Below, in pieces: positions 19,399 through 53,877 of a stretch of DNA of 64,000 nucleotides. Within the stretch, counting starts at the first letter, position 1; each line of letters opens with the position of its first letter. The notes below the pieces were generated by a model. That model worked only from the letters and a program-made list of their open reading frames with translations, was not told the origin of the DNA and made no database searches. The stretch is from IMG/VR virus record IMGVR_UViG_3300045125_000168, positions 62,001 through 126,000 of that record; one strand, written 5' to 3'. A program made the position numbers and the translations under genes.

Positions 19399-22300
19399 TT
19401 GGTAAGTAAAAGGGAGCCATCTGCCTGGAGAAAAATTTTGGATCAGTCTTTCAAAGCTCGCGCTCGAAGAGAGCGAGCACGGCAGCTTGAAGCCGTGCGC
19501 AACTCGCATTCCTTGGTAGCCGTGAATTGCAAGGTGACTTGCTCGCAAAGGCGCGCTGCTCCCAGGTTGGAGCGCATCAAAGGTTGTACGGGAAAGAGTT
19601 TGCCGAGGTCTTTTTGTCTTCGATGCTCCGACTATGATGGAGGTCGAAGAGGGCCTTCCTCTGGTCGGTGGTGGTGGAGCGATCTTCCGTGACCAAATTT
19701 TGCGCAGGTTCACCCAGGAGACTCCAGGGTTCAGTTACCGCTTGACTTATTTGATTCGATCAATCTTGCCTGAGGACACGTCCAAGCGGTTCACCAAGAG
19801 AGAGTATGATGCCTGCTGGACCCATTTGATGACAGATTTGGGCCTGCATCGGCCACGCTTGATTGTCGCGTTTGGCACAAGCGTTTTCCAATATCTCCGG
19901 GGCAAGGCGATCAATAAGCGTGAGATCGACACGCTGCTGGATGGCAGCACCAGCATGAACTCTTTGCGCAAGCATGTTTTTAGCTTGAAACTTTTGGAAG
20001 ACTATGAACCAGACCTTCTCGTTTGCTACAGCCCCTCTTTCGTCCTCTCAAACCCAAGTGCGACCCGATACATCGAGGAAGACAGTCAACGAGTCGTCGC
20101 CACCGCAAAACGCAAGTATTCCGCTGTTGTTACTTCTGCTCGCGTTAGTTCTATTGAAATTAAAAGAATAGACCTTTTAGACACGGAAGAAAAAGCACTG
20201 AATTTTCTTACGGCTCTTGCGCAGGGCGAGTTGACAAGCGGGACACCCGTGGCGTTCGACACAGAAACGATGAATTTGAACCGCAGGTTTAACAACGCCT
20301 TCCTCTCGTGGCAGTTTTCCTTTGTGCGCGGTGAGGCCGTGGTGATTCCGATTGAGCATCCTGATAAGCCGCTATTTGAGCCCGTGGAGTCAAAAATCCG
20401 CTTGGTGGAAGCAGGTCGTCAGCTTTTTAACGCTTCCTCTAAGAAAAGTCGGATCTCGATGTTTGTGGCTCACAACGCGAAGTTTGATCTTTCTGTGTTG
20501 TATGGGCTTTTGGGTATTATCCAAAAAATCCTGACGCACCTTTTTGGTGGTGTACTCAAAACGCGATGCATTGGTTGGATGAAAACCGCAAAGGGCTTGC
20601 GCGTTTCATGGAGTCTGGGGACAAACCCTACAGTCTCAAAGACTCTCGGCAAAGAGCTTTTTAACTTTCGTTACCGGGCCGAGCATTTGGAAAAAGGTCC
20701 GATGGTCATTTGATGGACCTGGCCGATTGATGAGCTTGCCGAGTACGGTGGAAGCGATACGATTTTGACCTTGGCTCTTCAGGCCGAGCAGTTGCGGCTT
20801 GCCGATGAACAGCCTGACGCGGAGCAAAAGCAAAACTCCTCAGGTTCATGCAATTTTATTATTCTAAGACTAACCGTAGCCTCGCTTTGATGGAGTGCAA
20901 CGGGCTTTATGTGTCGAATGAGCATTTGAGCTACTTGCAAGGTGTAGACTCACCCATTTGGAACCGTATTACAGAGATCAAGCATCATCTTTTGCAGGAG
21001 AGTCCTGAGGTCTTGGAGTTTCGTCGTCGCTACTCTCACAAGCTCACTTCTAAAACGACGGTGGCTTATGATGACCTTTGGGCCGAAGATTCGGGGCCTG
21101 CGGAGATTGTCGATCTAGACATCAAAAGAAAACCCACCGCGATGCTTTTTACCTTGATTTTTTAAAACTAGAACCTTTGGAATACAGTCAAAAAACCAAA
21201 AGAACCTTCTTTGATTCTGGGTTTTTAGAGCATTACCTCAAGCTCGAAAAACTACCGCACGGCCCCTGGGGTGAGACCTTATTTGGACCATTACGCCCAG
21301 ATGGTGGAAGACCCGAAGACTGGTGATCTCGTTCCACCGCCTAATCCGCTTCAGTTAATCAGCGAGTTGGCCAAGCTGGAAAAGCTCGCAGCGGGTTATC
21401 TCAACTCGATTCAAAAGCTGATCGACGATCAGATGGGTGACTGTCGGGATAGTCGCGTTCGAGCTTCCTTCACCCGACCGGAACGGATACGGGTCGGTTA
21501 AGTTCATGCATAGCCGCAGGTTCCTTGGTTGAGGTGGTGCGTGATCTTGGTCAGTTCCCCAAAGGGATTCCGATTGAGGACGTAAAAGCGGGAGACCTTG
21601 TTTATTGTTACGATAACAGCGAGGTTCCGCAATTAACTTTAAAGCGTGTGCTTTGGTCAGGCAAACACAGGGCACCGAAAAGTTTTACGGTTGCATTGGG
21701 AGTCTGCTATCGATGGTTCCCGAGGTCACCTAGACTTGACTCCTGAGCATGGCGTTCGTCTCCTCGATGGTAGTTATGTCGCTGCTGAATGTTTGCAGCC
21801 TGATGATCGTATCCTTTGCTTAAGTCGTAAAACGCATTCCCGCTATAGCCGTTTGTATTTTTACGGTTGCTCGAAGGGAATTTTAGATCACGTTTTCGTG
21901 CATCGAACTCTGCGCCCTGAGCCTTTGGTCCCGGAGAAGTTGTTCATCATCGGGATTTGAACTTTTTAAATAATCGACCTGAAAATCTTTTGAAGACTGC
22001 GTGGTCTGAGCATTTTAGATCGAGTGGCTTGGACAAAAAAGGCAGAAGAAAGCGTAAGGTCGTTCCCTTCACACCAATATCAGAAGCGGTCAATCATCGG
22101 ATCGTTCGTATTGAAGAGCTTGCCCGTTCGGTCGCAGTTTACGATCTGCACATTGCAGATGTTAATAATTTCATCGTGAATGAGCTTTGTGTCCATAATT
22201 CTTCTCCGAACTTCCAGAATCTCCCTGCTGGACGGAATAAAGCGGCTAAGGAAATCAAAAATATGTTTCAGGCCGAGCCTCCGTCCAAAAGATGGCGAGA

Positions 22301-24385: not shown

Positions 24386-25020
24386 ATGGGCCACGCGCAA
24401 CCGCGATTGGCAGTGATGTGATGCGTCAGTGTTACGAGCGTGGCTGGATCACGACTCCGTGATGGGCAACATAATATCCCCGAGGCGGCCTTTAGAGGCA
24501 CCGTTGCCAATCACGTGCACATCACCCCCTCTGGCTTTCGCAAAGACGACGATTTATCCTGAGAACGCGATGAAGCTCCGGTTTCAAGAGCCTAACGGGT
24601 CTTTGATCTGGGAGAGTGGGAAGCCTTCGGGCGAGTTGCACATGCACTGGCTTTTGCAGCGTACGTGTGCCCTCGACGAGGGCTGTTGTCCACGTTCATG
24701 CGACTCATATTGTCGCCGCGATGTATGCAGGTTTCAACTTGCAGGATTTGGCCAAGGAGTTTCCTGAAGTTTTTCGTTACACCCGCGTTGGTCCGAACGT
24801 GGCCAGTTTACCTGCGACCAGTGTTGAACTAGGTGATGCCACGGCTCAGGCTCTTGGCGTTTGTCCGACACGGGCAAAGTCGATTACGACATTGTTGGTC
24901 AAGATCGTCATGGTGTGTGTGCTGTTGGAAAGCATCCGTGGGATGCTTATGAGCACGTCGAACGCTTGAATCATGTGTGTGAAATTGTCTTAGCGGGTTC
25001 TATCCACAAGTTATCCACAG
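24386..25020 (+). CDS. class II aldolase/adducin-family protein (frameshifted)
   Basis: DGNI, ITPSG, KPSGELHMH, VVHVHATH, HGVCAVG...AYEHVERL. Confidence 0.85.
25000..25019 (+). promoter_or_regulatory. tandem DnaA-box-like pair
   Basis: CTATCCACA-AG-TTATCCACA; the second matches the TTATCCACA consensus exactly. Confidence 0.4.
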
Positions 25021-43488: not shown

Positions 43489-45332
43489 AAATATGAGATC
43501 TACATTCAAATTATATCATATTGACGGATTTTCGGTTGTCGAGGACGAAGACCAAGGTATGAGTGTGACAAACGATGCAGAAAACGTCGTGCGGGATGTT
43601 CTGCTTACAATATCCAAAAACGAGAGCGATCATATACAGAGACACTCAAGGTAATTGGGATCAACTTTTGTTTGATGCAAAAGGTTTTTACAAAATTTAA
43701 GAGCTTGAACACACGAGATAAGGATCGTGCGCTTTGGCTTGCTCGATCGCTCAGAACTATTGCGCTAGGAGGTTGCAACATGAAATATTTTTTAGTGCCC
43801 CTTAAAGGGCAGGCGCATGCAGGCGAGGCGCCGTTTCCTGTATTTTCTTTACCGTGACGGTGACCGTTGTGTTCCAGATTGGACGTGGGTAACTGATTCA
43901 CTCAAAGGACCAGGAAGGTGCCCCCATTATTTCTAAGAGACAAGGATTGTCCATGATAAATAACCATGGCATGACGTTGACGCAATTTAAAATCGGTGAG
44001 CCGTTTTATACCGCAACGGGCAAATGGATTTGTGTGACGTAGGGACTTATTTCGTCCTTGCGGTCAAAGAATCGTCTTACCAGGATTATGTCACGGGGAG
44101 AACACGGGTGAACTTTTGATTTTCGATCGTTGGGACTTCGGTGGTTGCTATCTTGAACTTCCAGAAGGAGTCTGAATATGTCTCTTTTTATCGCTAAAAT
44201 AAAATCCGAGATAAAGAGATATCATAATATTGTGAATCAAAGGGTTTTGCTTGTGCAACAGGTAGGGAAGCCTGACGCAAGATGCTCATTTAAAGAATTT
44301 TTTCATAATGATGGCTTAACTAAGAAGCAGATAGAAGATATTCGCAGTTTGATGGTTGGTGATTGTATGCATCTCGAAGTCAGGCAAGGCTGGATTAAGA
44401 TCACGAGAGAAAAATGAAACCCAGGCACAAAGCCTGGGTTTCGAGTATTTCTTACTTGAGAAGAAAGGTGGCTTTAACCTTGTACCCGTAGAGTTTAAAC
44501 TCAGCGTTGAGTTGCGGAATGTTTTTTGTCTCAAGGCAAAGAATCGCATCGACGTTCAACCAGTCAAAGTCTTTGATGCCACGGACCTCAAACATATCGC
44601 AACCGGATTCGGTCATGCCCTTGTAGAAAGAAAAAACCGCTCGCTCTCATAGCTACCTTTTTGTCGCAGTTCCTCGATAAAGTCAGTCTTTAGCAGTAAG
44701 TTCGGGACGTCCTTTTCAATCGTAAAACGATTGGTCCCCAGGAGTTGTTTTCGCGTAGCCTTCTACCTTGAAGGATGTTTTTCTTCATCACGAGCAGTCA
44801 CAGAAACGGTGATCGTACTGGATTGCAAGAGTTTATCGCTTTGGCTGCGGATCGAGAACGTACTCGCTGGAGAAACCGATTTCAATCGTTTGCTCTTCAG
44901 GAGCTCACAGTCGGTGCCGAGCGATCTGTTTTTTGAAACGCACCACAAGACGCCACGAAGAATAGAAGACATAATGACGTTAATAGACGAAGCCTCATCT
45001 CTGAAATCTCCCTTTGGTTTTGGTCAGAGTTTGTTTAAGAACCAAGAACAAGGGCTTTGAATTTTAGAACTAGGGAAGATCATTAGAAGGTAGGATAGAC
45101 CGAAGATCCTGATCTTGCGCGGCATTGACATGCTCGACGTTTTGAACGCGCTCATGCAAGGAACCGCACTGATCGAGAAAAGACCGAGCAGCGTCACGCA
45201 TTTCTTTAGCCGATTGCCATAAGAGAAGAGCGAAGACTAGCAGCAAAAAAGTAATTATTCTGTCGATGAAAGGATCATGTGGGTTTCTCGACATCAGATT
45301 CACTACCCCAATCGATTTCAAGTCCACGCCAT

Positions 45333-46081
45333 TCAGATTTGCTTTTTAACTCTTGAGGTGTAGGAAAAATAGGTTGCACGACGACAAAGTGACTTCCGAT
45401 TTTTAACACCGCATTGAGGGATTCCCACTTTATCTCCAGGTTGCGTTCCAGGTCTTATCTTCGCAGTTTGAATCCCATACATAGTCAAAACATCGAAAGT
45501 CCCGCCCTTGAGCATCAAATTAAGCGGCACTTTTTCTTCGGAGTAGACATCGTTACCTTGGACGCTAAACTTAGTGTGACGCGCTGTATTGATAAAGATG
45601 ATAGCATCTCCACGATGCTCGCCCATCTTATGGCCCTTGCACAGTAGGACTATCTCACGAGTGCCGTTGCCTCTACTTAAGATTTCGGGCACAAGCTCAA
45701 TCGGAGTAGACACCACTTCAATGCGACCAACTTGCAGTCTAAATTCTTTATCATACTCCTCGGTACTAAAAGAAAATAACATATTACGACCAAAGAAAAC
45801 GTCTTCAAACTGAACTTTTAGCTCAATACGGATATTCAAGTCGCCTTTAAGGTTTGGCTTTCCAGACCGCATTTCATGCAACATCTCGCGATGCTGGTAC
45901 TCTAAATCCGTGAGCATCTTGTAGGCATGAGTGACTCGTCGAAAAACCTCAGGGTTACCCCCTTTGTCTGGGTGATGCTCTTGACACAGGTCACGCCATC
46001 TTTTTTAAGTTCTGAAAGAGTGGGGTTGCCTTGTTGTAAATCAAAGCCAAGATCCCTGAGATAAGAACGTGGGTCAAACAT
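45333..46081 (-). CDS. DnaJ-family co-chaperone (J domain + C-terminal domain; frameshifted)
   Basis: HHPDKGGNPEVFRRVTHAYKML (HPD motif); G.G...RGD; IRPGTQPGD. Confidence 0.85.
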
Positions 46082-46798
46082 GAATGATTCCCATAGTTAG
46101 AGCACATCACCTTGAACACAGGCAGAGTACAGGGTGTTTACCGTGGCCTCTTTTGCAGAACCACCATCGCACTCCCACTTAGCGGGCAGCTTGGTCACCA
46201 GTAGATCTGCAACGTAGGCAGCAACCGGGCGGCAGATGGCATCTTGCAACGCACCTTGCTCGCGTTCCTCACACAAATTCGCAGCTTCAATCTTGGCCAT
46301 AAGATCATCGGCAATTAGTTCTGGTTTTACAGCTAAGGACATTGCCGATTTTATCCCCGGCGATCACGGCAGCTTTGCGTGTGTCGCTGCATGTAGGCTT
46401 AAAAGTTTGGCAAGACGCTAAAAAGAGGCTCATAAGCAAAATTGATTTCATATTTTTGATCCTTTCAAATTTGTAATTTTATTTAACATCGCTTCGGAGA
46501 AAGCCGCAGATACCAGAGTTTTTCGCACATCGACGTTGCGTGTGCGCAAAGATAATTACCGAGAACCTCGTAAATATTTTTTTCCAGTATTTTAGGATTC
46601 ACTTTCACGTCGGGCATATCAAATAAATCTAATTGCCGCACGAAACTTTCGTAGATTCGCAGTTCGTTTTCCTCGTCAACGCCCGTGTCCTTGTTGCGGA
46701 AGCGAATGCCGACTTCAAGACATGAGCGAAGCCATGCGATCGAAACCACTTGTGTGACAAGCGTTTCCACTTCTTTGGTAATTTCCATGTCAGTAACC

Positions 46799-47882
46799 TC
46801 ATTGAACAATTAGGCCATTTCCAGTGTACTCGGGATAACCTTCGATGCGAAGGTCGAAAATTGTGTGAATTTGATCGATCGGTTTAGACCTTACGATTTT
46901 AGTCCAGGAGCAAGCGGTCATTTGCCATAAAAGGTGCCGCAGGAATGCGAGTTCATCTTCTACAAGGTCTTCGACAGGCGTTTCTAAATGGCAGTTCAGG
47001 ACGTCGATGACGAGAGAACGGGGTACTTTTTCACTCGCATACCGATAGGCCGAACGTGCATCTTGCACTTTTTCCACCAGGGACCAGCGGGTCATGTGAT
47101 TTTGCCCGCAGATCACCGTCAAACGACGAATATACTCCCGCAGTATTTTTGCTGCGGGCAGAGTCTCGACCCGAGACGGTTCTCCAATCCAATCGAGGCC
47201 GATCAAGAGGTCAAAGGCTTGGTACGACTCGCGCTTTATTTTGACAAAATAAGAGTCGCTGCGCTTTTGAATAGCCACTTGGATACCAAGGTTTTTGTAA
47301 CAGGCATTTAACCAGATTGGCTTGGTCGTGCTTTGGTATCCTCACGGCAGCGGTCGAGGCAACAGGGCAGCGAATCCCGAAGTTCAAAAAAGACCTTTTA
47401 GAAACGCGATCTGCCCCTCGCGGTCTACCTGCCCGATCATAGGCGTGTCGATCTCGATGGTGGTGCCAATAAAATCATGAATGATTCTTTCCCAATCATT
47501 CAGATAGGGAAAATCCCACTCATGATTGGGGATTGGGAGCTTTGCAAAAAGCCCTGTCTCCCTGGGCTTGCCCAGCCATTGACCCACATCTAAAAGAACA
47601 GGCGGCTGAAAAAGAGGGCGTCCGTCCACAAGGCTAAGGATGGGGTGGTCCTCCACACACTTGAGCGTGTCCCCATCCTCTGTTTCGATCTCATGCAGGG
47701 AGAGAAAGCCCTGAAGAGGTCGGTCACCCGTCGCGGGCCATTTCGGGTGGCGATTTCGAAGTCTTCTTTGAAAAAAAATTATGAGTCCAACCGATCTTAT
47801 CGCCAACAATGGCCTCATGCAGAAAATCAAATCGGACAAGACCAAGGGAGGAAGGAATCAAAGTGTCACCAGCCAAACACAT
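46799..47882 (-). CDS. free-standing intein/Hint-domain protein with LAGLIDADG remnant (frameshifted)
   Basis: AAAGGA RBS, ATG, then CLAGDTLIPSSLGLV; IETEDGDTLKCVEDHPIL; AFLKGLF; ends IFDLRIEGYPEYTGNGLIVQ-stop. Confidence 0.75.
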
Positions 47883-47898
47883 GATCTTGTCCTTTAGG

Positions 47899-48609
47899 TT
47901 ATGAAACGGTCATGAATTTTTTCCTGTAGGCATCCATATCCAGGGATAAAGATCCCCCTGGGTCAATTTTGCGCGTTGGTGCAATTTCATGGTGTCCGAC
48001 AATATTGCCGACTGGAAATTTGTAGGTTTGAAGCATCCAGCGAATCAGATCATCGAGGGCTTTTTCCTGGGCTGAAGTAAACGGGTCCCAAAAGCGGTTG
48101 CCGAGCATGAGTTTGTCGCGGGGTGTGCCTTTATAGGGCCTGTCGTACCCGTCTACAAAAGCGCCTGATTTCAAGCGTTGAATAGGTCCGAGACAGACCA
48201 CCTCAATACCGAGAAAATATTGGTTGAGGAATTTGAGATTTCCCCAAGCCGACTCTCCTGCATGGGCCGCTTGACGGTTGCAAGGAACCATTTGCACCGT
48301 TGCGCCATCTTTGCCGATTAGAAAATGAATATCGACCTCGTTCTTTTGAAAGAAGTCTACCGTCGCGTCCAGATTATCCGACACGGTGTAGTGAATCACG
48401 ACGCCTTGAGGTTTGAGTTCGCTTTTGCTAGTGTCTTTGTCTGGCACCATTTTAGCCTTAGGATAAACCCAAGGAGTCGCGAGAGCAGGAACGGGAGCAG
48501 ACTTCTTAACGGCAGCCGGAGATTGATTTGCTGATGATTTGATAGCTGGTGCAACAGCACCTGTTTTTAGTAGTCGTGGTTCTCCTGTCTTAAAAGGATC
48601 GGACGACAT
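47899..48609 (-). CDS. N-acetylmuramoyl-L-alanine amidase (Amidase_2), probable endolysin
   Basis: VVIHYT, IHFLI..DG, AHAG.S.W, LGIEV, IVGHHEIAP.RK.DPG. Confidence 0.92.
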   Translation of the reverse strand: MSSDPFKTGEPRLLKTGAVAPAIKSSANQSPAAVKKSAPVPALATPWVYPKAKMVPDKDTSKSELKPQGVVIHYTVSDNLDATVDFFQKNEVDIHFLIGKDGATVQMVPCNRQAAHAGESAWGNLKFLNQYFLGIEVVCLGPIQRLKSGAFVDGYDRPYKGTPRDKLMLGNRFWDPFTSAQEKALDDLIRWMLQTYKFPVGNIVGHHEIAPTRKIDPGGSLSLDMDAYRKKFMTVS

Positions 48610-48621
48610 GTTGCAACCTCC

Positions 48622-48998
48622 TTACTTTTTTCTGTCCGCAGCGTCGAGTTGACGGACGGAGCTTTTGGCCCAAGCAAAACCGGGATCACCACCCCAAAGC
48701 ATCCAAGCGATATATCCCTTGCTTGGATTAGAAGGGGTAGACTCCTTCCAAGCTTTTGATTTTTTATCGACTTGATGCCTAGAGAAAAAACTAAACATCC
48801 TGCGGGCCGTGGACGGGGAAATTGTTTTGCCGTTCGAAAGGTCGCGGGCTCTTGCGATACCAACGGGTGTTGCAGCTTTTTCACTTTTAAAAGCTCAAGA
48901 CCTCTTTTTGCAGCGTCTTTGACGCCTTTTGGCGGTTTGAAGTCGATATGATCGTATTTAGCTTCGATAAGTATCTCTAGTCGCCTGATCGCACTCAC
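48622..48998 (-). CDS. conserved phage domain protein (PP..V..AA.RGL...RM.SFFSRH...IAW.LWGGD) with leader (frameshifted)
   Basis: Manual translation MSAIRRLEILIEAKYDHIDFKPPKGVKDAAKRGL...GYIAWMLWGGDPG. Confidence 0.65.
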
Positions 48999-49307
48999 GG
49001 TTGACCCTTTCTTTTGTGGTCTGCCATTTCGAGAGTTTCGTTTCGATAGTGTCGAACATTTCTTCGAGAACAAAAGAATCTGGGCTTGCACCATAGTAAG
49101 AGAGAGGGCGCAGATCATCAGGTCGCAGGCTTCTTCTCGTAGGTGTTCGATCGCATGTTCGACATCTTTGTTTTCTTTCAGGTTGCGGTAAGCCTTAGCG
49201 ACCTCGCCTAGCTCCTCGGTCGCTTGCAGAAGGTCCCGGCTCATATTCACACGCAGGTAGCTAATATGGTCGATGATGTCTTGAAGACGAATCATAAAAA
49301 CCCTCAT
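48995..49307 (-). CDS. MazG-like nucleotide pyrophosphohydrolase
   Basis: EELGEVA...LREEACDL. Confidence 0.75.
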
Positions 49308-50570
49308 AGAAGTTTCGACGCGACGGTTGCGAGTTCGGAGCGTTCTCCTTTAACAAGCTGGACGTGTGCAGCGATGGCTTCCTCTTTGAACTTTTCGATG
49401 ACATACGTCAGACCATTATTGGTCGCATCGATATAAGGGTTATCGATCTGATCGGGGTCGCCTGTTAAAATGATCTTGGTGTTTTCACCCGCACGGGTCA
49501 AAATGGTTTTGACTTCGTGTGGCGTCAGGTTTTGCGCTTCGTCCACGATAAAATAAATGTTTGGAAGCGATCGTCCACGGATGTAGGTGAGAGGCTCAAC
49601 TTGCAGTATACCTTGATTCATCAATTCTTCATACCCGTGCTTCGGTCCTAAAAGAAGCTCAAGGTTGTCGAAAATCGGTTGCATCCAAGGGTTGAGCTTC
49701 TCAGACAAGTCTCCTGGTAGAAAGCCAAGGTCTTTTCCCATGGGGAAGATCGGTCGAGCGACGAGCAGTTTTTTAAACACATGCTCATCGGTGGTTTTGT
49801 GCAAACCCGCAGCGATGGCCATAAGAGTTTTACCCGTTCCCGCTCCTCCGCTTAGGGTCACGAGCTTAATCCGATCATCCATCAGGGCAGCCAGAGCCAA
49901 GAACTGTTCATCGTTGCGAGGTTTGACACCCCAGATATCTTCGGGGATGTTGACTCGTTTGATCTTTTGCGAAGCCGCATCAAAGCGCCCGTAAAGGGTT
50001 CTGGTGCGTCCTTCAATCGCGATAAATTCGTTGGCTTTGAGATCGTAAGAGCGGTGTGACTTTTGAAAAAAGCCATCAAGCTCGTGGTCCTCTACCTCGA
50101 TAGCGCGGACACCCGTATAAAGATCGGACACATCGATTTTGTCGCACTCGAAGTCTTGTGCTTCGACCCCGAAAGCGTCTGCTTTGATTCTAAGGTTTGC
50201 GTCCTTGGTGATAAGGACCGTCTCGTGCCCTCGGTCGCGGAAGGTGCCTGCAATAGCCAGGATATGATTATCGGTAGTATTCGATAGGGTGGGGGTAAGG
50301 GCTCTTTGTCGAGGTAGACGTACAAAATCCCAGAGTCCATACGGTCTTCATGAAGAATTACCCCTGAGCACAGACTACCTTTGTCTCGCAACCGATCCAA
50401 GATACGAGAGAACTCACGAGCGTGACGTCCAGTCTCGCTCATATCTTTTTTGAACTTATCAAGCTCTTCGATTACCGAGATCGGGATGACAACATCATTT
50501 TCCTCGAACATAAAAATGCTTTGAGGGTCGGTCAACATGACGTTGGTATCGAGGACAAAAGTTTTTTCAT
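49304..50570 (-). CDS. phoH: PIN-PhoH family protein (frameshifted)
   Basis: VLDTNV, VIEELD PIN domain; GGAGTGKT, RGRSL, DEAQN, GDPDQID. Confidence 0.92.
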
Positions 50571-50820
50571 CGTGGTTTTTCCACCGTTTGACAACGGTTC
50601 CTTGGTTAAGAGGTGGTCATATCCGAACTACCAGTAACCCAGAGGACACGATTCATTTTGCGAGCGGGCTTTGATTCGGACGAAGCAACCACACTCGCGG
50701 CATACGTCCTTTTTTACGTCAAGTTTGTCGCAACCAAAACACGCGAGTAATCGAGACGTGCGAAGGTTGACATCCGCTTCCTTCCAGTGAGCAAGAGCTT
50801 TGAAAAACGATGTGATGCGC

Positions 50821-51849
50821 TTAATAAGTTTCGCCATGGTTTGAACGGGCCTTAGACTGAAAGATGCCTGCAACTTTGTCCCAAAAACCTTTGCGCTTTT
50901 CGAGAGCCTGCAATAATTCCGAATCTTTCACAGGATGTGTTCCGTGTTTAGAAACAGCGACCGCAGCAGCAGTGTTCGCAAGGTGAACTGCCTCTTCCAA
51001 AGGACATGCAGAACCGAGTGCAAGCGCCATGACCGCAGCGACGGTATCACCTGCCCCTGACACGTCAAACACCTCTTGCGCTACAGCAGGTAAATAGATG
51101 CTCGGTGCTTGTCTGCGCACGAGCACCATGCCTTCGGCCCCAAGCGTGACGAGGACGTTTGGAAAGCCGAAAATGTCTCGCAACTGCTCACCGAGGTATT
51201 CTCCAGTGACTTTCGAGTGCGAGTCGATTTTGAGCGCATCGCAGGCTTCTTTGCGGTTCGGGGTGATAAGAGACGCTCCACAATAGCGCGTGTAGTCGCG
51301 ACCCTTGGGATCGACGATCACCGGGATTTCATGTTTTTGTCCAAGCTCGATAATTGCCCGACAGGACTCAGGGGTAAGAACTCCTTTGCCGTAATCGCTT
51401 AAAAGCAGCGCGTTGGGGAGGTTGGGTGTTTGAAGAGACTCCTCGATTTTTCCCACAAGACTCACCCGAATCTCGTCCGAAAGTGGTTCGGTGGTTTCGT
51501 GATCGATACGGCAGATCTGGTGGCCTTGGCAGGTGATGCGGGTTTTGCGGGTGGTCATGCGACTATCATCAAAAACAAACAGTGGGATCACCAAATCGTC
51601 GTTTTTAAGCATATTTTTGAGCAAAAAACACGTCTCATCCATCCCGACAACGCTGAATAGATGGGCAGAGGCACCGAGCCCGGAGACGTTCATCGCTGAA
51701 TTTGCGGCACCACCAGGAACGCAAAATTGCCGACGTACTTCCACGACCGGAACCGGAGCTTCTGGTGAAATGCGCTGCACTTCTCCGTCCACATACTCGT
51801 CAAGCATCACATCACCGATCACTGCGACGGTTGTTTTTGTTTTTGCCAA
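50821..51849 (-). CDS. rfaE: RfaE/HldE domain I-like D-glycero-D-manno-heptose-7-phosphate kinase (PfkB family)
   Basis: IGDVMLDEY..G.V.RISPEAPVPV, GGAAN, SDYGKG, VDPK, TPNRKE, DVSGAGDTV. Confidence 0.9.
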   Translation of the reverse strand: MAKTKTTVAVIGDVMLDEYVDGEVQRISPEAPVPVVEVRRQFCVPGGAANSAMNVSGLGASAHLFSVVGMDETCFLLKNMLKNDDLVIPLFVFDDSRMTTRKTRITCQGHQICRIDHETTEPLSDEIRVSLVGKIEESLQTPNLPNALLLSDYGKGVLTPESCRAIIELGQKHEIPVIVDPKGRDYTRYCGASLITPNRKEACDALKIDSHSKVTGEYLGEQLRDIFGFPNVLVTLGAEGMVLVRRQAPSIYLPAVAQEVFDVSGAGDTVAAVMALALGSACPLEEAVHLANTAAAVAVSKHGTHPVKDSELLQALEKRKGFWDKVAGIFQSKARSNHGETY

Positions 51850-51957
51850 GGCAGCATAGAAAAATTCCCCCTTAGATCAAAAAATCTTTCGCTTCTAGGC
51901 ACTTACAGCGTCTTTTGGAAAAATGTTCTGTTATTTTAGCAAATTAAAACTTTTTTC

Positions 51958-51984
51958 TCAGTGAAAATCAAAAGTCTCCGAAAA
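51958..51984 (+). promoter_or_regulatory. weaker sigma-28-type promoter
   Basis: TCAG-N15-TCCGAAAA upstream of 52019. Confidence 0.5.
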
Positions 51985-52018
51985 GAGTTATGAACTTACT
52001 TTTAGGAGGTTTTAAAAT

Positions 52019-52712
52019 ATGGCTACCAAGAAGAAAAAGCGGCAACGACCAACAAAAGTGCGATCAATGCAGTATTTGGCGGGGCGACCCCTCTAGCTCC
52101 AGCGGAAAAAAGGCCGCTAAAAAGAACAAAAAAGAGCAGCAGGAAATGCCTGCCCCTTTTGATACCTATGTTGCCCTCCACATCGTCGGCAACATGGTGA
52201 AAAAGCCCGCAGAGGCGATGGCGGCTGAGATCAAAGAAAAAGTGGTCGATATGTTTGACGACATCCTCACCGAGACGGGGGGAGTCGAGACTTTCTTGGG
52301 TTACCTCGGGGATGCCGAGGCCAACGTCCAATGCCGAAAAAGCGCAAATATTCCAAGGGAATTTGTGGATATGCTGCGCGAGAACGACATCCCGTTTGAA
52401 GAAGAAGAGCAGCAAGCAGCCCGCTACATCATTAACCCTGAAATCCTCAAGGATCAGGATTTACTTGGAAAATTGGCTGTTGCGTTGCAAAATGCCCCCG
52501 GCCTTGGTGGCGTGGAGATCATCCAGAAACAACTGCCTGAGGTCAAAGTCAAGCCAACTGAGGAAACCCTACGGCATCTCGCTAAAATCAAGGACAAGAC
52601 GTTGCGTCGGACTCTTCTCGATGGTATCACCACCATCGCGTTCGGGCAGCACAAAATGCCTACCAAAAAGGCTCTCAAAGTCCTGGAAGAATTGGATATT
52701 TTTGGCGAATGA
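52019..52712 (+). CDS. hypothetical protein (frameshifted)
   Basis: AGGAGG RBS before ATG 52019. Confidence 0.55.
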
Positions 52713-53345
52713 TTATGTATTACAATACCTGGAAATTTTTGTACCCGCCTCGGCCTGAGTCTGCCATCATGCCAAGTCTTCTTGGTTTTTACGAGGGCCG
52801 TGGGTGGTGGGCTCAAAAAGCCAAAAAAATGGCACCAACTCCCTCATCGGCATCTCGCCTGAGGGTGAGATTGTGACACGGACCCGTCACGACACCGAAC
52901 ACAAGGCTTGGACACTGACACCACACCTGGAAAATGCTTTGCGTGGGCTTTTCCCCCTGGGGATTGGTATGTGCTTTGTGCTGAATTACTGCATAGCAAA
53001 ACAAAAACTATAAAAGACACGCTTTTTATTCATGACATCCTGGTGGAGAAAAGCGTGTTTTTGCTCGACTCGACGTTTGCGGACCGGCAAAAAATCTTAG
53101 AGCCATTCAAAACAAACGTCGAAGCATGGTCGCATTATGTTATCGACGGTCAAAATAAACTTTGGCTTGCGAAGAATTTTACGACAGGCTTTCGCACTCT
53201 TTTTGACGCGATCCGAGATCCAACCATCGATGAGGGTCTTGTTTTAAAAGACCCTCAAGGTCGGCTCAAAATGTGCGTCTCCCCCACCGACAACGCTTCC
53301 TGGTGTGTCAAGGCTAGGTATCCGACTAAGAATTACCGCTTCTGA
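52709..53345 (+). CDS. minimal ATP-dependent ligase-like nucleotidyltransferase (frameshifted)
   Basis: Q.KKNGT (motif I), AELL, HDIL, EGLVLK, W.VK.R; no OB domain seen. Confidence 0.7.
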
Positions 53346-53877
53346 TGCCGTAAAAATACAAATCGTGGGATTGGTTGTTGGTCTCAAAGGCGTGTTCGAT
53401 AAAAATGGAGGCGCAATCTAAACACGCTTCGATATCCTGTTGCGTCAAATTTTTGTAGTAGTCTTCCCATCCTTCGGTAGAACAGGTCAGAGGCGAGTCT
53501 TCAGGGCTTGTGCGTCTTGTGCCATGCTCGGGCCTTCCCGTCGTTGCGCAGGTAAAAATCAATAAGCCACCTTTTTTCAACATCCGCACGGCATTCTTTA
53601 TTGTTTCGGCGTAGAATTGGTCATGCTCAAAGCATTCTGTTGAGATAATACAATCGTAATATTCGTCTGCACCTTGCCATTCATGCCCGCGACAAACATA
53701 GTCTACGCCTTTACCAGGGCCGATATCGATGCCGTGATATTCACAGTTTGTGAAAAGACTGCGATTGCTGCCGTTGATGTCGAGAGATCCGATGTCGAGA
53801 ACTTTTGTGTTTGCAAAAAAATGGGGATGCTTTTGTTTGACGATAGCACAGAAAGCACGTTGTTCTGGATGAGACAT
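53326..53877 (-). CDS. class I SAM-dependent methyltransferase
   Basis: VLDIGSLDING, GIDIG.G.GVD, STECFEH, LKKGG. Confidence 0.88.
   Translation of the reverse strand: MSHPEQRAFCAIVKQKHPHFFANTKVLDIGSLDINGSNRSLFTNCEYHGIDIGPGKGVDYVCRGHEWQGADEYYDCIISTECFEHDQFYAETIKNAVRMLKKGGLLIFTCATTGRPEHGTRRTSPEDSPLTCSTEGWEDYYKNLTQQDIEACLDCASIFIEHAFETNNQSHDLYFYGIRSGNS

What the first reader, a model, noticed from the sequence alone, without database searches (positions are those of the whole stretch)
46799..47882. Extein-less, free-standing intein gene (Met-Cys...Gln-stop)
Seen: its own RBS (AAAGGA) 17 nt after the amidase stop. Met is followed directly by intein block A (CLAGDTLI), then a block B-like LKCVEDHPIL, a LAGLIDADG-like AFLKGLF, and blocks F/G (FDLRIEGYPEYTGNGLIVQ) ending at a stop. 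The next gene has its own GAGG/ATG. There is no N- or C-extein, block-B Thr and the penultimate His are missing, and the terminal residue is Gln. Known: inteins normally sit in host proteins, with yeast HO as a domesticated free-standing exception. Inference: a domesticated intein acting as a DNA-binding regulator or nuclease, or a Hint protein with a free N-terminal Cys acting in trans, rather than a splicing element.
Basis: partly seen in the sequence, partly recalled or inferred. Interest (0 to 1): 0.75.

Follow-up and report, generated by a model that had tools for sequence, protein, structure and literature searches.

The report
Free-standing, nuclease-dead intein gene in phage
A large phage carries a whole intein as a separate gene with no host protein to splice and no working DNA-cutting site, yet selection preserves it, making it a rare prokaryotic-virus counterpart of the yeast HO story whose function is still unknown.

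Summary
The quoted motifs, start and stop are all present on the minus strand at 47882-46799. The deposited sequence is not one ORF, however. It changes frame four times, three of them in homopolymer runs. Neighbouring conserved genes are broken the same way, and a short-read relative has 1-nt indels at five of the break points. I therefore read the breaks as assembly errors.

Three short-read contigs from two lineages (L002/L009, L004) carry intact 356-360-aa ORFs at the same locus. All start Met-Cys and end Gln-stop, with separate flanking genes. "Extein-less" is real.

The protein is intein-derived. Its nearest canonical relative is the P-loop intein of DnaB helicases from related phages, and the AF2 model matches only inteins. 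Cys1, the block-B His and the block-F Asp are kept. Gln sits at the penultimate-His position and the stop codon sits where the terminal Asn would be. One LAGLIDADG half-domain is deleted, and the surviving motif has no acidic residue, so neither splicing nor cleavage is expected.

dN/dS is about 0.12. This phage's own dnaB is the intein-less allele with an intact homing site.

Best reading: a domesticated intein. Sequence-specific DNA binding is inferred, not shown.

The parts
46799..47882 (-). Free-standing intein-derived gene. Conceptually 360 codons plus the stop. In the deposited sequence it is five in-frame pieces separated by four frame changes.
   Evidence: intact orthologs
47890..47895 (-). 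Shine-Dalgarno-like AAAGGA, 7 nt upstream of the ATG and 3 nt after the amidase stop codon (47901-47899).
   Evidence: L002 has AAGGAG at the same place
47841..47879 (-). Intein block A (CLAGDTLIPSSLG). The Cys1 codon is 47879-47877, directly after the ATG.
   Evidence: the Cys column is invariant in 24 sequences
47771..47778 (.). Frame change 1: an 8-base A/T run, one base short relative to L002. Short-read relatives X1 and X2 have an extra A here.
47690..47700 (.). Frame change 2: one base missing, not in a homopolymer run.
47642..47656 (-). Intein block B (VEDHP). The His is kept and is invariant. Val sits at the Thr position.
47386..47391 (.). Frame change 3: a 6-base A/T run, one base short. 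It creates the apparent TGA after AFLKGLF.
47292..47296 (.). Frame change 4: a 5-base A/T run, one base extra.
47195..47413 (-). The only remaining LAGLIDADG half-domain, corresponding to the second half of canonical relatives. Its motif reads FLKGLF-LNFG where relatives have FLRGLFEGDG, so there is no acidic residue.
   Evidence: (I-DmoI matches of about 80 residues)
46802..46861 (-). Intein blocks F and G (IFDLRIEGYPEYTGNGLIVQ). The block-F Asp is kept. The block-F His position holds Pro. Gln sits at the penultimate-His position.
46799..46801 (-). Stop codon TGA, at the position where canonical relatives have the terminal Asn. L002 and L004 have TAG here.
47899..48609 (-). Upstream gene: an N-acetylmuramoyl-L-alanine amidase (endolysin type) with its own stop codon. 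It is not an N-extein.
46483..46788 (-). Downstream gene gp111 (function unknown), starting at the ortholog-supported ATG 46788 after GAGG. It contains one frame change near 46540. It is not a C-extein.

Best explanation
**Identity and origin.** The gene encodes a complete intein body with no host protein. It consists of Met plus Cys1, the N-terminal Hint lobe, a remnant linker, one degenerate LAGLIDADG half-domain, a helical accessory region and the C-terminal Hint lobe. It ends one residue before the usual terminal Asn. It descends from the intein that sits in the Walker-A (P-loop) site of DnaB helicases of related large phages. It was copied out of dnaB into a variable locus just downstream of the endolysin amidase, in the ancestor of a small clade of metagenomic phages. 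This part is shown.

**State of the window copy.** The four frame changes in the window are most likely long-read homopolymer errors, so the real gene is probably intact. This is inferred from strong indirect evidence.

**What it cannot do.** It cannot splice, because it has no exteins, no terminal Asn and no +1 nucleophile. It should not cut DNA, because one LAGLIDADG half is missing and the other has no metal-binding acid. This is shown at sequence level.

**Why it persists.** It is kept by purifying selection, strongest on the Hint lobes, so it has a function of its own. This is shown.

**Likely activity.** The most likely activity is the one that excised inteins and nuclease-dead LAGLIDADG proteins keep: sequence-specific binding of DNA without cleavage. 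A plausible target is the ancestral homing site, which is intact in this phage's own intein-less dnaB. This part is inferred and untested.
For: **Extein-less and conserved.**
- Intact ORFs of 360, 360 and 356 aa sit at the same locus in three short-read contigs (L002, L009, L004).
- They have the same Met-Cys start and Gln-stop end.
- L010 shows the same junction.

**Intein ancestry.**
- phmmer over 1.84 billion representatives finds only the family itself and then a DnaB helicase with a canonical intein, P0024 (E 7e-9).
- Pfam PF14890 matches at E 2.6e-5.
- The AF2 model (pLDDT 87, pTM 0.86) matches only inteins: TliVMA E 2.8e-15, PI-PfuI 1.4e-13, and Atlas TM 0.72-0.79 over residues 1-360.
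- The tree places the family as a 100/100 clade beside the DnaB-intein group, on a stem of 2.8 substitutions per site.

**Residue states.** The alignment with 21 canonical inteins is.

**Selection.**
- L002 vs L009: 8.5 synonymous against 3.5 non-synonymous changes, dN/dS 0.12, p about 9e-4.
- Window vs the ~89% relative: 11 synonymous against 7 non-synonymous codons in the listed stretch.
- The ORFs stay open at saturated dS.
- Hint-N identity is 56-77% against 36-48% for the LAGLIDADG half.

**Assembly errors.**

**Empty DnaB site.** G000's dnaB reads ANSGGGK|SLYALNLM at 24672|24671. It is 51-60% identical to the exteins of the intein-bearing helicases P0024 and P0028 (48% to P0027).
Against: - No direct evidence for DNA binding. 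The complex prediction was not run.
- The whole protein is neutral to acidic (pI 5.7-7.1). Only the LAGLIDADG half and the helical region are basic.
- It is the fastest-evolving gene in its neighbourhood: 45-61% identity where the neighbours have 63-94%. That could mean relaxed constraint.
- The family has only about five sampled lineages, so invariance of Cys1, His and Asp is weak statistically.
- The AF2 model used an alignment that contained inteins, so the fold match is not independent of the sequence homology.
- Reads from the source sample were not available, so the frame changes in the window itself are not directly shown to be errors.
Confidence: 0.55

Rival explanations
1. It is an active free-standing homing endonuclease, like excised PI-SceI or yeast HO/WHO. 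It would cut genomes that lack it and copy itself into the site downstream of the amidase gene.
For: - It descends from a homing-endonuclease intein.
- The gene is present in some related phages and absent in others at a variable locus.
- It diverges fast.
Against: - The first LAGLIDADG half-domain is deleted.
- The surviving motif has Leu and Phe/Asn at the two acidic positions in all three full-length family sequences.
- Pfam LAGLIDADG_3 does not match.
- Carriers have the more similar amidases (75-83% identity to L002's, against 59-70% in non-carriers). This fits one acquisition followed by vertical descent rather than repeated homing.
Confidence: 0.1
2. It is a decaying relic with no function, an intein pseudogene like Arthrobacter Arth_1007 that has simply not been deleted yet.
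For: - The window copy has four frame changes.
- The family sits on a long stem branch and is the least conserved gene in its neighbourhood.
- Catalytic residues for both splicing and cleavage are lost.
- There is a precedent in PMC3196547.
Against: - The ORFs remain open at 356-360 aa in three short-read contigs from two lineages, although synonymous sites are saturated.
- dN/dS is 0.12 between close copies.
- The same kind of frame change hits essential, 85-94%-identical neighbours in the window. This points to assembly error, not decay.
Confidence: 0.12
3. The preserved Hint active site is the point. After Met removal the protein has a free N-terminal Cys next to the block-B His and block-F Asp. 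It would carry out acyl-transfer chemistry in trans, for example capturing thioester intermediates.
For: - The Hint lobes are the best conserved parts of the protein.
- Cys1, the block-B His and the block-F Asp are invariant in the family.
- Met-Cys is a good methionine-aminopeptidase substrate (established knowledge, not tested here).
Against: - No substrate is known.
- There is no precedent for a trans-acting Hint domain of this kind.
- With about 49% overall identity, joint invariance of three residues is not unusual.
- The block-F His and the block-G His-Asn are lost.
- The Hint lobe also contributes to DNA binding and to the fold in PI-SceI and HO. That would explain its conservation without any chemistry (established knowledge).
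Confidence: 0.1
4. It is an ordinary intein whose exteins are hidden by assembly errors, fused in reality to the amidase or to gp111.
For: - The window assembly is full of 1-nt indels.
- In L002 the amidase and the ORF happen to be in the same frame, separated by a TAG.
Against: - Clean short-read contigs show stop codons and ribosome-binding sites on both sides.
- The frame relation to the amidase differs between L002, L004 and the window.
- The residue after the ORF position is not Cys, Ser or Thr.
- Phages without the gene have amidase and gp111 as separate genes, with another ORF between them.
Confidence: 0.02

Closest known systems
DnaB helicase P-loop inteins of related large phages (P0024, P0027, P0028 and others)
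   Same: - They are the closest sequence relatives (24-26% identity; E 7e-9).
- They share the block order and the unusual block A (C....[LI][IV]PT).
- They share block B (G/T-x-[ED]-H) and the helical accessory region.
- They share block F/G ([EH]Y..NG...).
- Their exteins are 51-60% identical (P0024, P0028; 48% for P0027) to this phage's own DnaB.
   Different: - They sit in-frame in dnaB after GGGK.
- They end SHN followed by Ser or Thr.
- Nearly all have two LAGLIDADG halves with Glu and Asp (P0030 lacks the first half and the Asp).
- The free-standing gene has no exteins, no Asn, one half-domain and no acids.
Yeast HO endonuclease and the WHO elements (Coughlan et al. 2020, PMC7282813)
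   Same: - They are intein-derived genes with no exteins.
- They do not splice and persist as separate genes.
- They diverge fast.
   Different: - HO and WHO are eukaryotic.
- They carry a C-terminal zinc-finger domain and lack motif G.
- They are active LAGLIDADG nucleases.
- Here there is no zinc finger, motif G is kept up to its last two residues, and the nuclease site is gone.
Arthrobacter sp. FB24 Arth_1007 intein (Tori and Perler 2011, PMC3196547)
   Same: - It is an intein of phage-DnaB type outside any helicase gene.
- It is unable to splice.
   Different: - Arth_1007 still has 66 residues of flanking extein.
- It lacks the block-B His and is described as a pseudogene.
- The present family has zero exteins, keeps the His and is under purifying selection in several lineages.
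   Same: - The LAGLIDADG domain is retained as a fold but lacks the active-site Asp.
- P0030 also lacks the first half-domain.
   Different: Those are kept because the host protein needs splicing. Here no host protein exists, so selection must act on something else.
Nuclease-dead LAGLIDADG proteins recruited as nucleic-acid binders (WhiA regulators, intron maturases). This comparison is from general knowledge and was not tested here.
   Same: The LAGLIDADG scaffold lacks catalytic acids and is kept by selection.
   Different: There is no sequence relationship. Those proteins have two half-domains and no Hint lobes. A binding function is not shown for the present protein.

Membership tests
Canonical intein (protein-splicing element) | Inserted in-frame in a host protein, with an N-extein and a C-extein | tested here: not met
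   Stop codons and ribosome-binding sites flank the ORF on both sides in the window, L002, L004 and L009. The frame relation to the neighbours is not conserved.
Canonical intein (protein-splicing element) | Hint fold with blocks A, B, F and G in order | tested here: met
   Alignment with 21 canonical inteins. The AF2 model matches only inteins in PDB, BFVD and the Atlas.
Canonical intein (protein-splicing element) | Cys or Ser as the first residue, and the block-B His | tested here: met
   Cys2 and His80 are invariant. The block-B Thr is Val, but many splicing-type relatives have Leu there.
Canonical intein (protein-splicing element) | C-terminal Asn (or Gln/Asp) followed by a +1 Cys, Ser or Thr | tested here: not met
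   The stop codon aligns with the Asn column and Gln aligns with the penultimate His. No residue follows.
Canonical intein (protein-splicing element) | Pfam Intein_splicing (PF14890) above the gathering score | tested here: not met
   24.5 bits against a cut-off of 35.8, E 2.6e-5. The window read-through scores 19.2 bits.
LAGLIDADG homing endonuclease | Two LAGLIDADG half-domains in one chain, or one half that dimerises | tested here: inconclusive
   Only the second half is present. Dimerisation was not tested, because the complex job was not folded.
LAGLIDADG homing endonuclease | Acidic residue at the end of each LAGLIDADG helix for metal binding | tested here: not met
   Canonical FEGDG is FLSFG (L002), FLNFG (window) or LLSNA (L004). 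Pfam LAGLIDADG_3 gives no hit.
HO/WHO family | Intein-like region without exteins, fused to a C-terminal zinc-finger domain, with an active nuclease | tested here: not met
   There are no exteins, which matches. But the protein ends at block G with no zinc finger, and the nuclease acids are absent.
Bacterial intein-like (BIL) domains | Hint domain without an endonuclease, embedded in a larger and often variable or secreted protein | tested here: not met
   There are no flanking protein regions. An endonuclease remnant and an accessory domain are present. The definition is from general knowledge.

The most novel reading that the evidence does not exclude
The gene is a domesticated intein used in conflict between phages. 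One version: the nuclease-dead protein sits on the intact homing site in the phage's own intein-less dnaB and blocks cleavage and invasion by the active DnaB intein of co-infecting relatives. The other version: through its preserved Hint pocket and free N-terminal Cys, it intercepts the thioester intermediate of a rival's intein-bearing helicase and poisons its splicing. Either would be a new kind of anti-mobile-element or inter-phage competition factor.
Probability: 0.1. Interest if true: 0.85.

Novelty: new variant of a known kind. Interest (0 to 1): 0.55.

Why it matters
Inteins are usually seen as parasites that survive only because the host protein needs them to splice out. Yeast HO and WHO are the one well-studied case where an intein left its host gene and took on a life of its own.

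This family would be a counterpart in viruses of prokaryotes, and the opposite way round. The nuclease is dead, and the splicing (Hint) lobes are the best conserved part, although there is nothing to splice.

That makes two questions testable:
- What can a Hint plus LAGLIDADG scaffold do other than splice and cut?
- How can an intein be copied out of its gene with boundaries exact to one residue?

There is also a practical point. The window assembly carries roughly one indel per 600 bp of coding DNA between 45 and 53 kb, so any ORF-level finding in it needs a check against relatives.

Tried and rejected
- **Stop-codon recoding.** I first read two in-frame TGA codons and tested this (inconclusive). 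I rejected it once the L002 ortholog showed that the TGAs lie in an out-of-frame stretch between two frame changes.
- **Profile and sequence searches on the window pieces alone.**
  - Pfam gave only a weak PF14890 hit on the last piece.
  - PHROGs and NCBIfam gave no significant hit (only E>0.1 to families of unknown function on the first piece).
  - PDB sequences gave nothing.
- **Scans with the pieces or with the family alignment.**
  - IMG/VR viral contigs gave no relatives.
  - GTDB genome contigs gave none.
  - JGI metagenome contigs gave only the already known L004 contig.
  - INPHARED phages gave nothing by DNA or protein.
- **Amidase-based scans of IMG/VR.** Nothing.
- **AF2 with the 3-sequence family alignment.** It failed (pLDDT 39). 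Adding 21 canonical inteins gave a confident model.
- **Complex prediction.** I submitted two copies of the protein with 50 bp of the empty dnaB site. The job was not folded and is not evidence either way.
- **Atlas feature search of the helical region 233-332.** Only sub-threshold leads to LAGLIDADG and intein clusters.
- **Hallmark searches in G000.** Terminase (PF03237, PF03354) and capsid (PF07068, PF05065) models found nothing. The viral nature rests on the IMG/VR class and on gene content.
- **Fusion with the amidase or gp111.** Rejected; see the rival explanations.

Full report
**What is in the window**

The feature lies on the minus strand.
- The amidase gene ends with TAA at 47901-47899.
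- AAAGGA follows at 47895-47890.
- ATG-TGT (Met-Cys) starts at 47882.
- The last codons read ...GNGLIVQ before TGA at 46801-46799.
- The next gene has GAGG and then an ATG at 46788.

Under the bacterial code the 1,084 bases fall into five in-frame pieces. The four frame changes are:
- one base missing in the 8-base A/T run at 47771-47778;
- one base missing near 47696;
- one base missing in the 6-base run at 47386-47391;
- one base extra in the 5-base run at 47292-47296.

I first took two TGA codons for in-frame stops and tested stop-codon recoding. That idea fell once an intact ortholog showed that those TGAs lie in the out-of-frame stretch between the third and fourth shift.

**Are the frame changes real?**

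Probably not. I compared the window with the intact genes of a related contig, L002. Almost every gene between 45 and 53 kb changes frame.
- PIN-PhoH is split in two although it is 94% identical in protein to a single 422-aa ORF in L002.
- The DnaJ-like gene (85% identical) is split in three.
- gp99, gp130, gp111, gp118 and gp209 are also split.

Of the 13 break sites I inspected, 11 hold homopolymer runs of four or more.

Four public metagenome runs hold short-read contigs of a relative about 89% identical in DNA and colinear over 45300-50600. That relative has 1-nt insertions where five of the window's frames break: 50290, 49097, 48876, 47770 and 46548.

This is the signature of homopolymer indel errors in a long-read assembly, not of gene decay. 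Reads from the source sample itself were not available, so the point is inferred and not shown.

**Intact orthologs and the extein question**

Homologs of the amidase led to related contigs.
- L002 (10.6 kb, short-read) has the amidase, then an intact 360-aa ORF, then gp111, gp118 and a DnaJ-like gene.
- L009 holds a 99% identical copy.
- L010 shows the same amidase-ORF junction.
- L004, a JGI contig, has an intact 356-aa ORF that is 48% identical, with the same neighbours.

All start Met-Cys and end IIVQ-stop. The spacers to the flanking genes hold ribosome-binding sites.

The frame relation to the amidase differs between contigs. It is the same frame with a TAG between them in L002, and a different frame in L004 and in the window. 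Read-through fusions are therefore excluded.

Related phages with more distant amidases (59-70% identical) lack the gene.
- L003 has an 89-aa ORF on the other strand between the amidase and gp111.
- L006 has a DHH-like gene.
- L008 has an acetyltransferase.

Carriers have the more similar amidases (75-83% identical to L002's). This fits one acquisition in their common ancestor at a variable locus.

**What the protein is**

On the intact L002 protein, Pfam gives only Intein_splicing, below its cut-off (24.5 bits, E 2.6e-5).

An exhaustive HMMER search of 1.84 billion representatives finds:
- P0021, the L004 protein;
- two fragments that are the window's own broken ORFs;
- a 965-aa DnaB helicase, P0024, with a canonical intein at residues 212-682 (E 7e-9);
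- two weaker matches that are not inteins.

A search with that intein recovered about 150 canonical inteins. I aligned 21 of them with the family. The alignment gives the anatomy:
- **Block A.** Cys1 is kept. The block matches the clade's own flavour (C....[LI][IV]PT).
- **Block B.** It reads VEDHP. The invariant His is kept. The Thr position holds Val, but many canonical members of this clade have Leu there.
- **First LAGLIDADG half-domain.** About 100 residues are missing.
- **Second LAGLIDADG motif.** Canonical FLRGLFEGDG is FLKVLFLSFG, FLKGLF-LNFG or FIKALLLSNA. Both acidic positions are lost.
- **Helical accessory region.** It is kept.
- **Block F.** The Asp is kept. The His position holds Pro.
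- **Block G.** Canonical NG[LI][MI]SHN is NGIIVQ followed by the stop codon. Gln stands at the penultimate-His position and the stop stands where the terminal Asn would be.

With this alignment AlphaFold2 gave a confident model (pLDDT 87, pTM 0.86). The three-sequence alignment had failed. The model's matches are all inteins:
- PDB: TliVMA E 2.8e-15, PI-PfuI 1.4e-13, PhoVMA, PI-TkoII, mini-inteins and PI-SceI. About 80 residues also match the half-domain of I-DmoI.
- BFVD.
- ESM Atlas: TM 0.72-0.79 over residues 1-360.

Nearly all the matched proteins are much longer because they include exteins. The fold match is not independent of the sequence homology, since inteins were in the input alignment.

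**Origin**

A maximum-likelihood tree puts the window, L002, P0020 and P0021 in one 100/100 clade. The clade sits on a long stem (2.8 substitutions per site) attached to the DnaB-intein group.

The phage's own genome has a DnaB helicase gene. Its protein is 51-60% identical to the exteins of the intein-bearing helicases P0024 and P0028 (48% to P0027). It is uninterrupted at the insertion point, reading ANSGGGK|SLYALNLM at G000 24672|24671.

The genome therefore holds the empty homing site in dnaB. About 85 kb away it holds a free-standing, degenerate copy of the intein that occupies that site in related phages. How the copy came to have boundaries exact to one residue is unexplained.

**Is it functional?**

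- L002 and L009 differ at 12 bases. These amount to 8.5 synonymous and 3.5 non-synonymous changes, dN/dS 0.12, binomial p about 9e-4.
- Between the window and its ~89% relative, the substitutions listed for 47737-47849 give 11 synonymous and 7 non-synonymous codons.
- Between L002 and L004, synonymous sites are saturated (pS 0.79). Both ORFs are nonetheless open and 49% identical.

The gene is thus under purifying selection, but it is the fastest-evolving gene in its neighbourhood. gp111, gp118 and DnaJ are 63-74% identical in the same L002-L004 comparison. PhoH is 94% identical between the window and L002.

Conservation is uneven. Hint-N is 56-77% identical and Hint-C 60-67%. The LAGLIDADG half is 36-48% and the linker 27-45%.

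**Mechanism**

Shown at sequence level:
- No splicing is possible. There are no exteins, no Asn and no +1 nucleophile.
- No canonical LAGLIDADG catalysis is expected. One half-domain is missing and no acid remains.

Inferred: the protein is essentially an "excised intein" made directly from its own gene. What such a scaffold still does without catalysis is bind DNA. In PI-SceI and HO the Hint lobe contributes to binding (general knowledge). I therefore favour a sequence-specific DNA binder, with the ancestral dnaB site as a candidate target.

Points against this:
- There is no direct test. The complex prediction was not folded.
- The whole protein is neutral to acidic, and only the LAGLIDADG half and the helical region are basic.

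The rivals are an active homing endonuclease, a functionless relic, trans-acting Hint chemistry with the free N-terminal Cys, and a mis-assembled ordinary intein. They are weighed in their own sections. The last is contradicted by the clean contigs.

**Comparison with what is known**

- **Yeast HO and WHO.** These are the described intein-derived genes without exteins (PMC7282813). They have a zinc finger, lack motif G and are active nucleases.
- **Arthrobacter Arth_1007.** This is a phage-DnaB-type intein outside any helicase. It has 66 extein residues, no block-B His and no splicing, and is called a pseudogene (PMC3196547).
- **PhoVMA.** Inteins with dead endonuclease domains such as this one are known (PMC8966425), but they are kept because the host protein needs splicing.

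Full-text searches for free-standing, stand-alone or orphan inteins, or inteins without exteins, found no phage case.

I rate this as a new variant of a known kind. It is a free-standing intein in a virus of prokaryotes, nuclease-dead, with the Hint lobes as the best conserved part. The family is very small in current data: about five lineages, all metagenomic.

**Verdict**

The motifs and boundaries are right, but the ORF is broken in the deposited sequence, most likely by assembly errors.
Extein-less, non-splicing and domesticated hold up. The nuclease option is unlikely. The function is still open.

Noticed in passing
window 21507-22199 (+): A canonical intein sits in the family-A DNA polymerase gene. 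Cys1 is at 21507 and the intein ends ...LCVHN followed by Ser at 22200, with the DNA_pol_A C-extein after it. Its interior changes frame like other genes here. The profile built around the free-standing family does not detect it, so it belongs to a different intein lineage.
   Followed up: partly
window 45000-53400 (both strands): There is about one 1-nt indel per 600 bp of coding DNA, mostly in homopolymer runs. It splits PIN-PhoH (50538-49304), the DnaJ-like gene (46081-45284), gp99/gp130 (49307-48625, where ORF listing shows an artificial 246-aa fusion ORF), gp111, gp118 and gp209. ORF calls in this window cannot be trusted without a check against relatives.
   Followed up: yes
G000:C1:23900-25233 (-), outside the window: The phage's DnaB helicase gene is the intein-less allele of a helicase family that carries a P-loop intein in related phages. 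The empty site GGGK|S is at 24672|24671.
   Followed up: yes
whole record G000 (236,430 bp); source JGI contig of 351,605 bp: IMG/VR classes the record as a provirus cut from a longer contig. Pfam models for terminase (PF03237, PF03354) and major capsid (PF07068, PF05065) find nothing. Only three tRNA genes are present (two Ser, one Tyr). The host and the true ends of the element are unknown.
   Followed up: partly
L003:5247-5516 (-), L006:5985-6797 (+), L008:1615-2352 (-): The position just downstream of the amidase gene is a variable cargo site in related phages. L003 has an 89-aa ORF on the opposite strand, L006 a DHH-like phosphoesterase and L008 an acetyltransferase.
   Followed up: partly
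P0030 residues 211-559 (DnaB helicase from a metagenome): This is a splicing-type DnaB P-loop intein of only 349 aa. Like the free-standing family, it has lost the first LAGLIDADG half and the catalytic Asp (FEANGD), but it keeps Cys1 and SHN|S. It shows the same endonuclease decay inside a host gene.
   Followed up: no
window 47099: All four short-read runs of the ~89% relative show a 1-nt deletion here, inside a stretch where the window's frame agrees with L002. A compensating change, if any, was among the indels the tool did not list.
   Followed up: no
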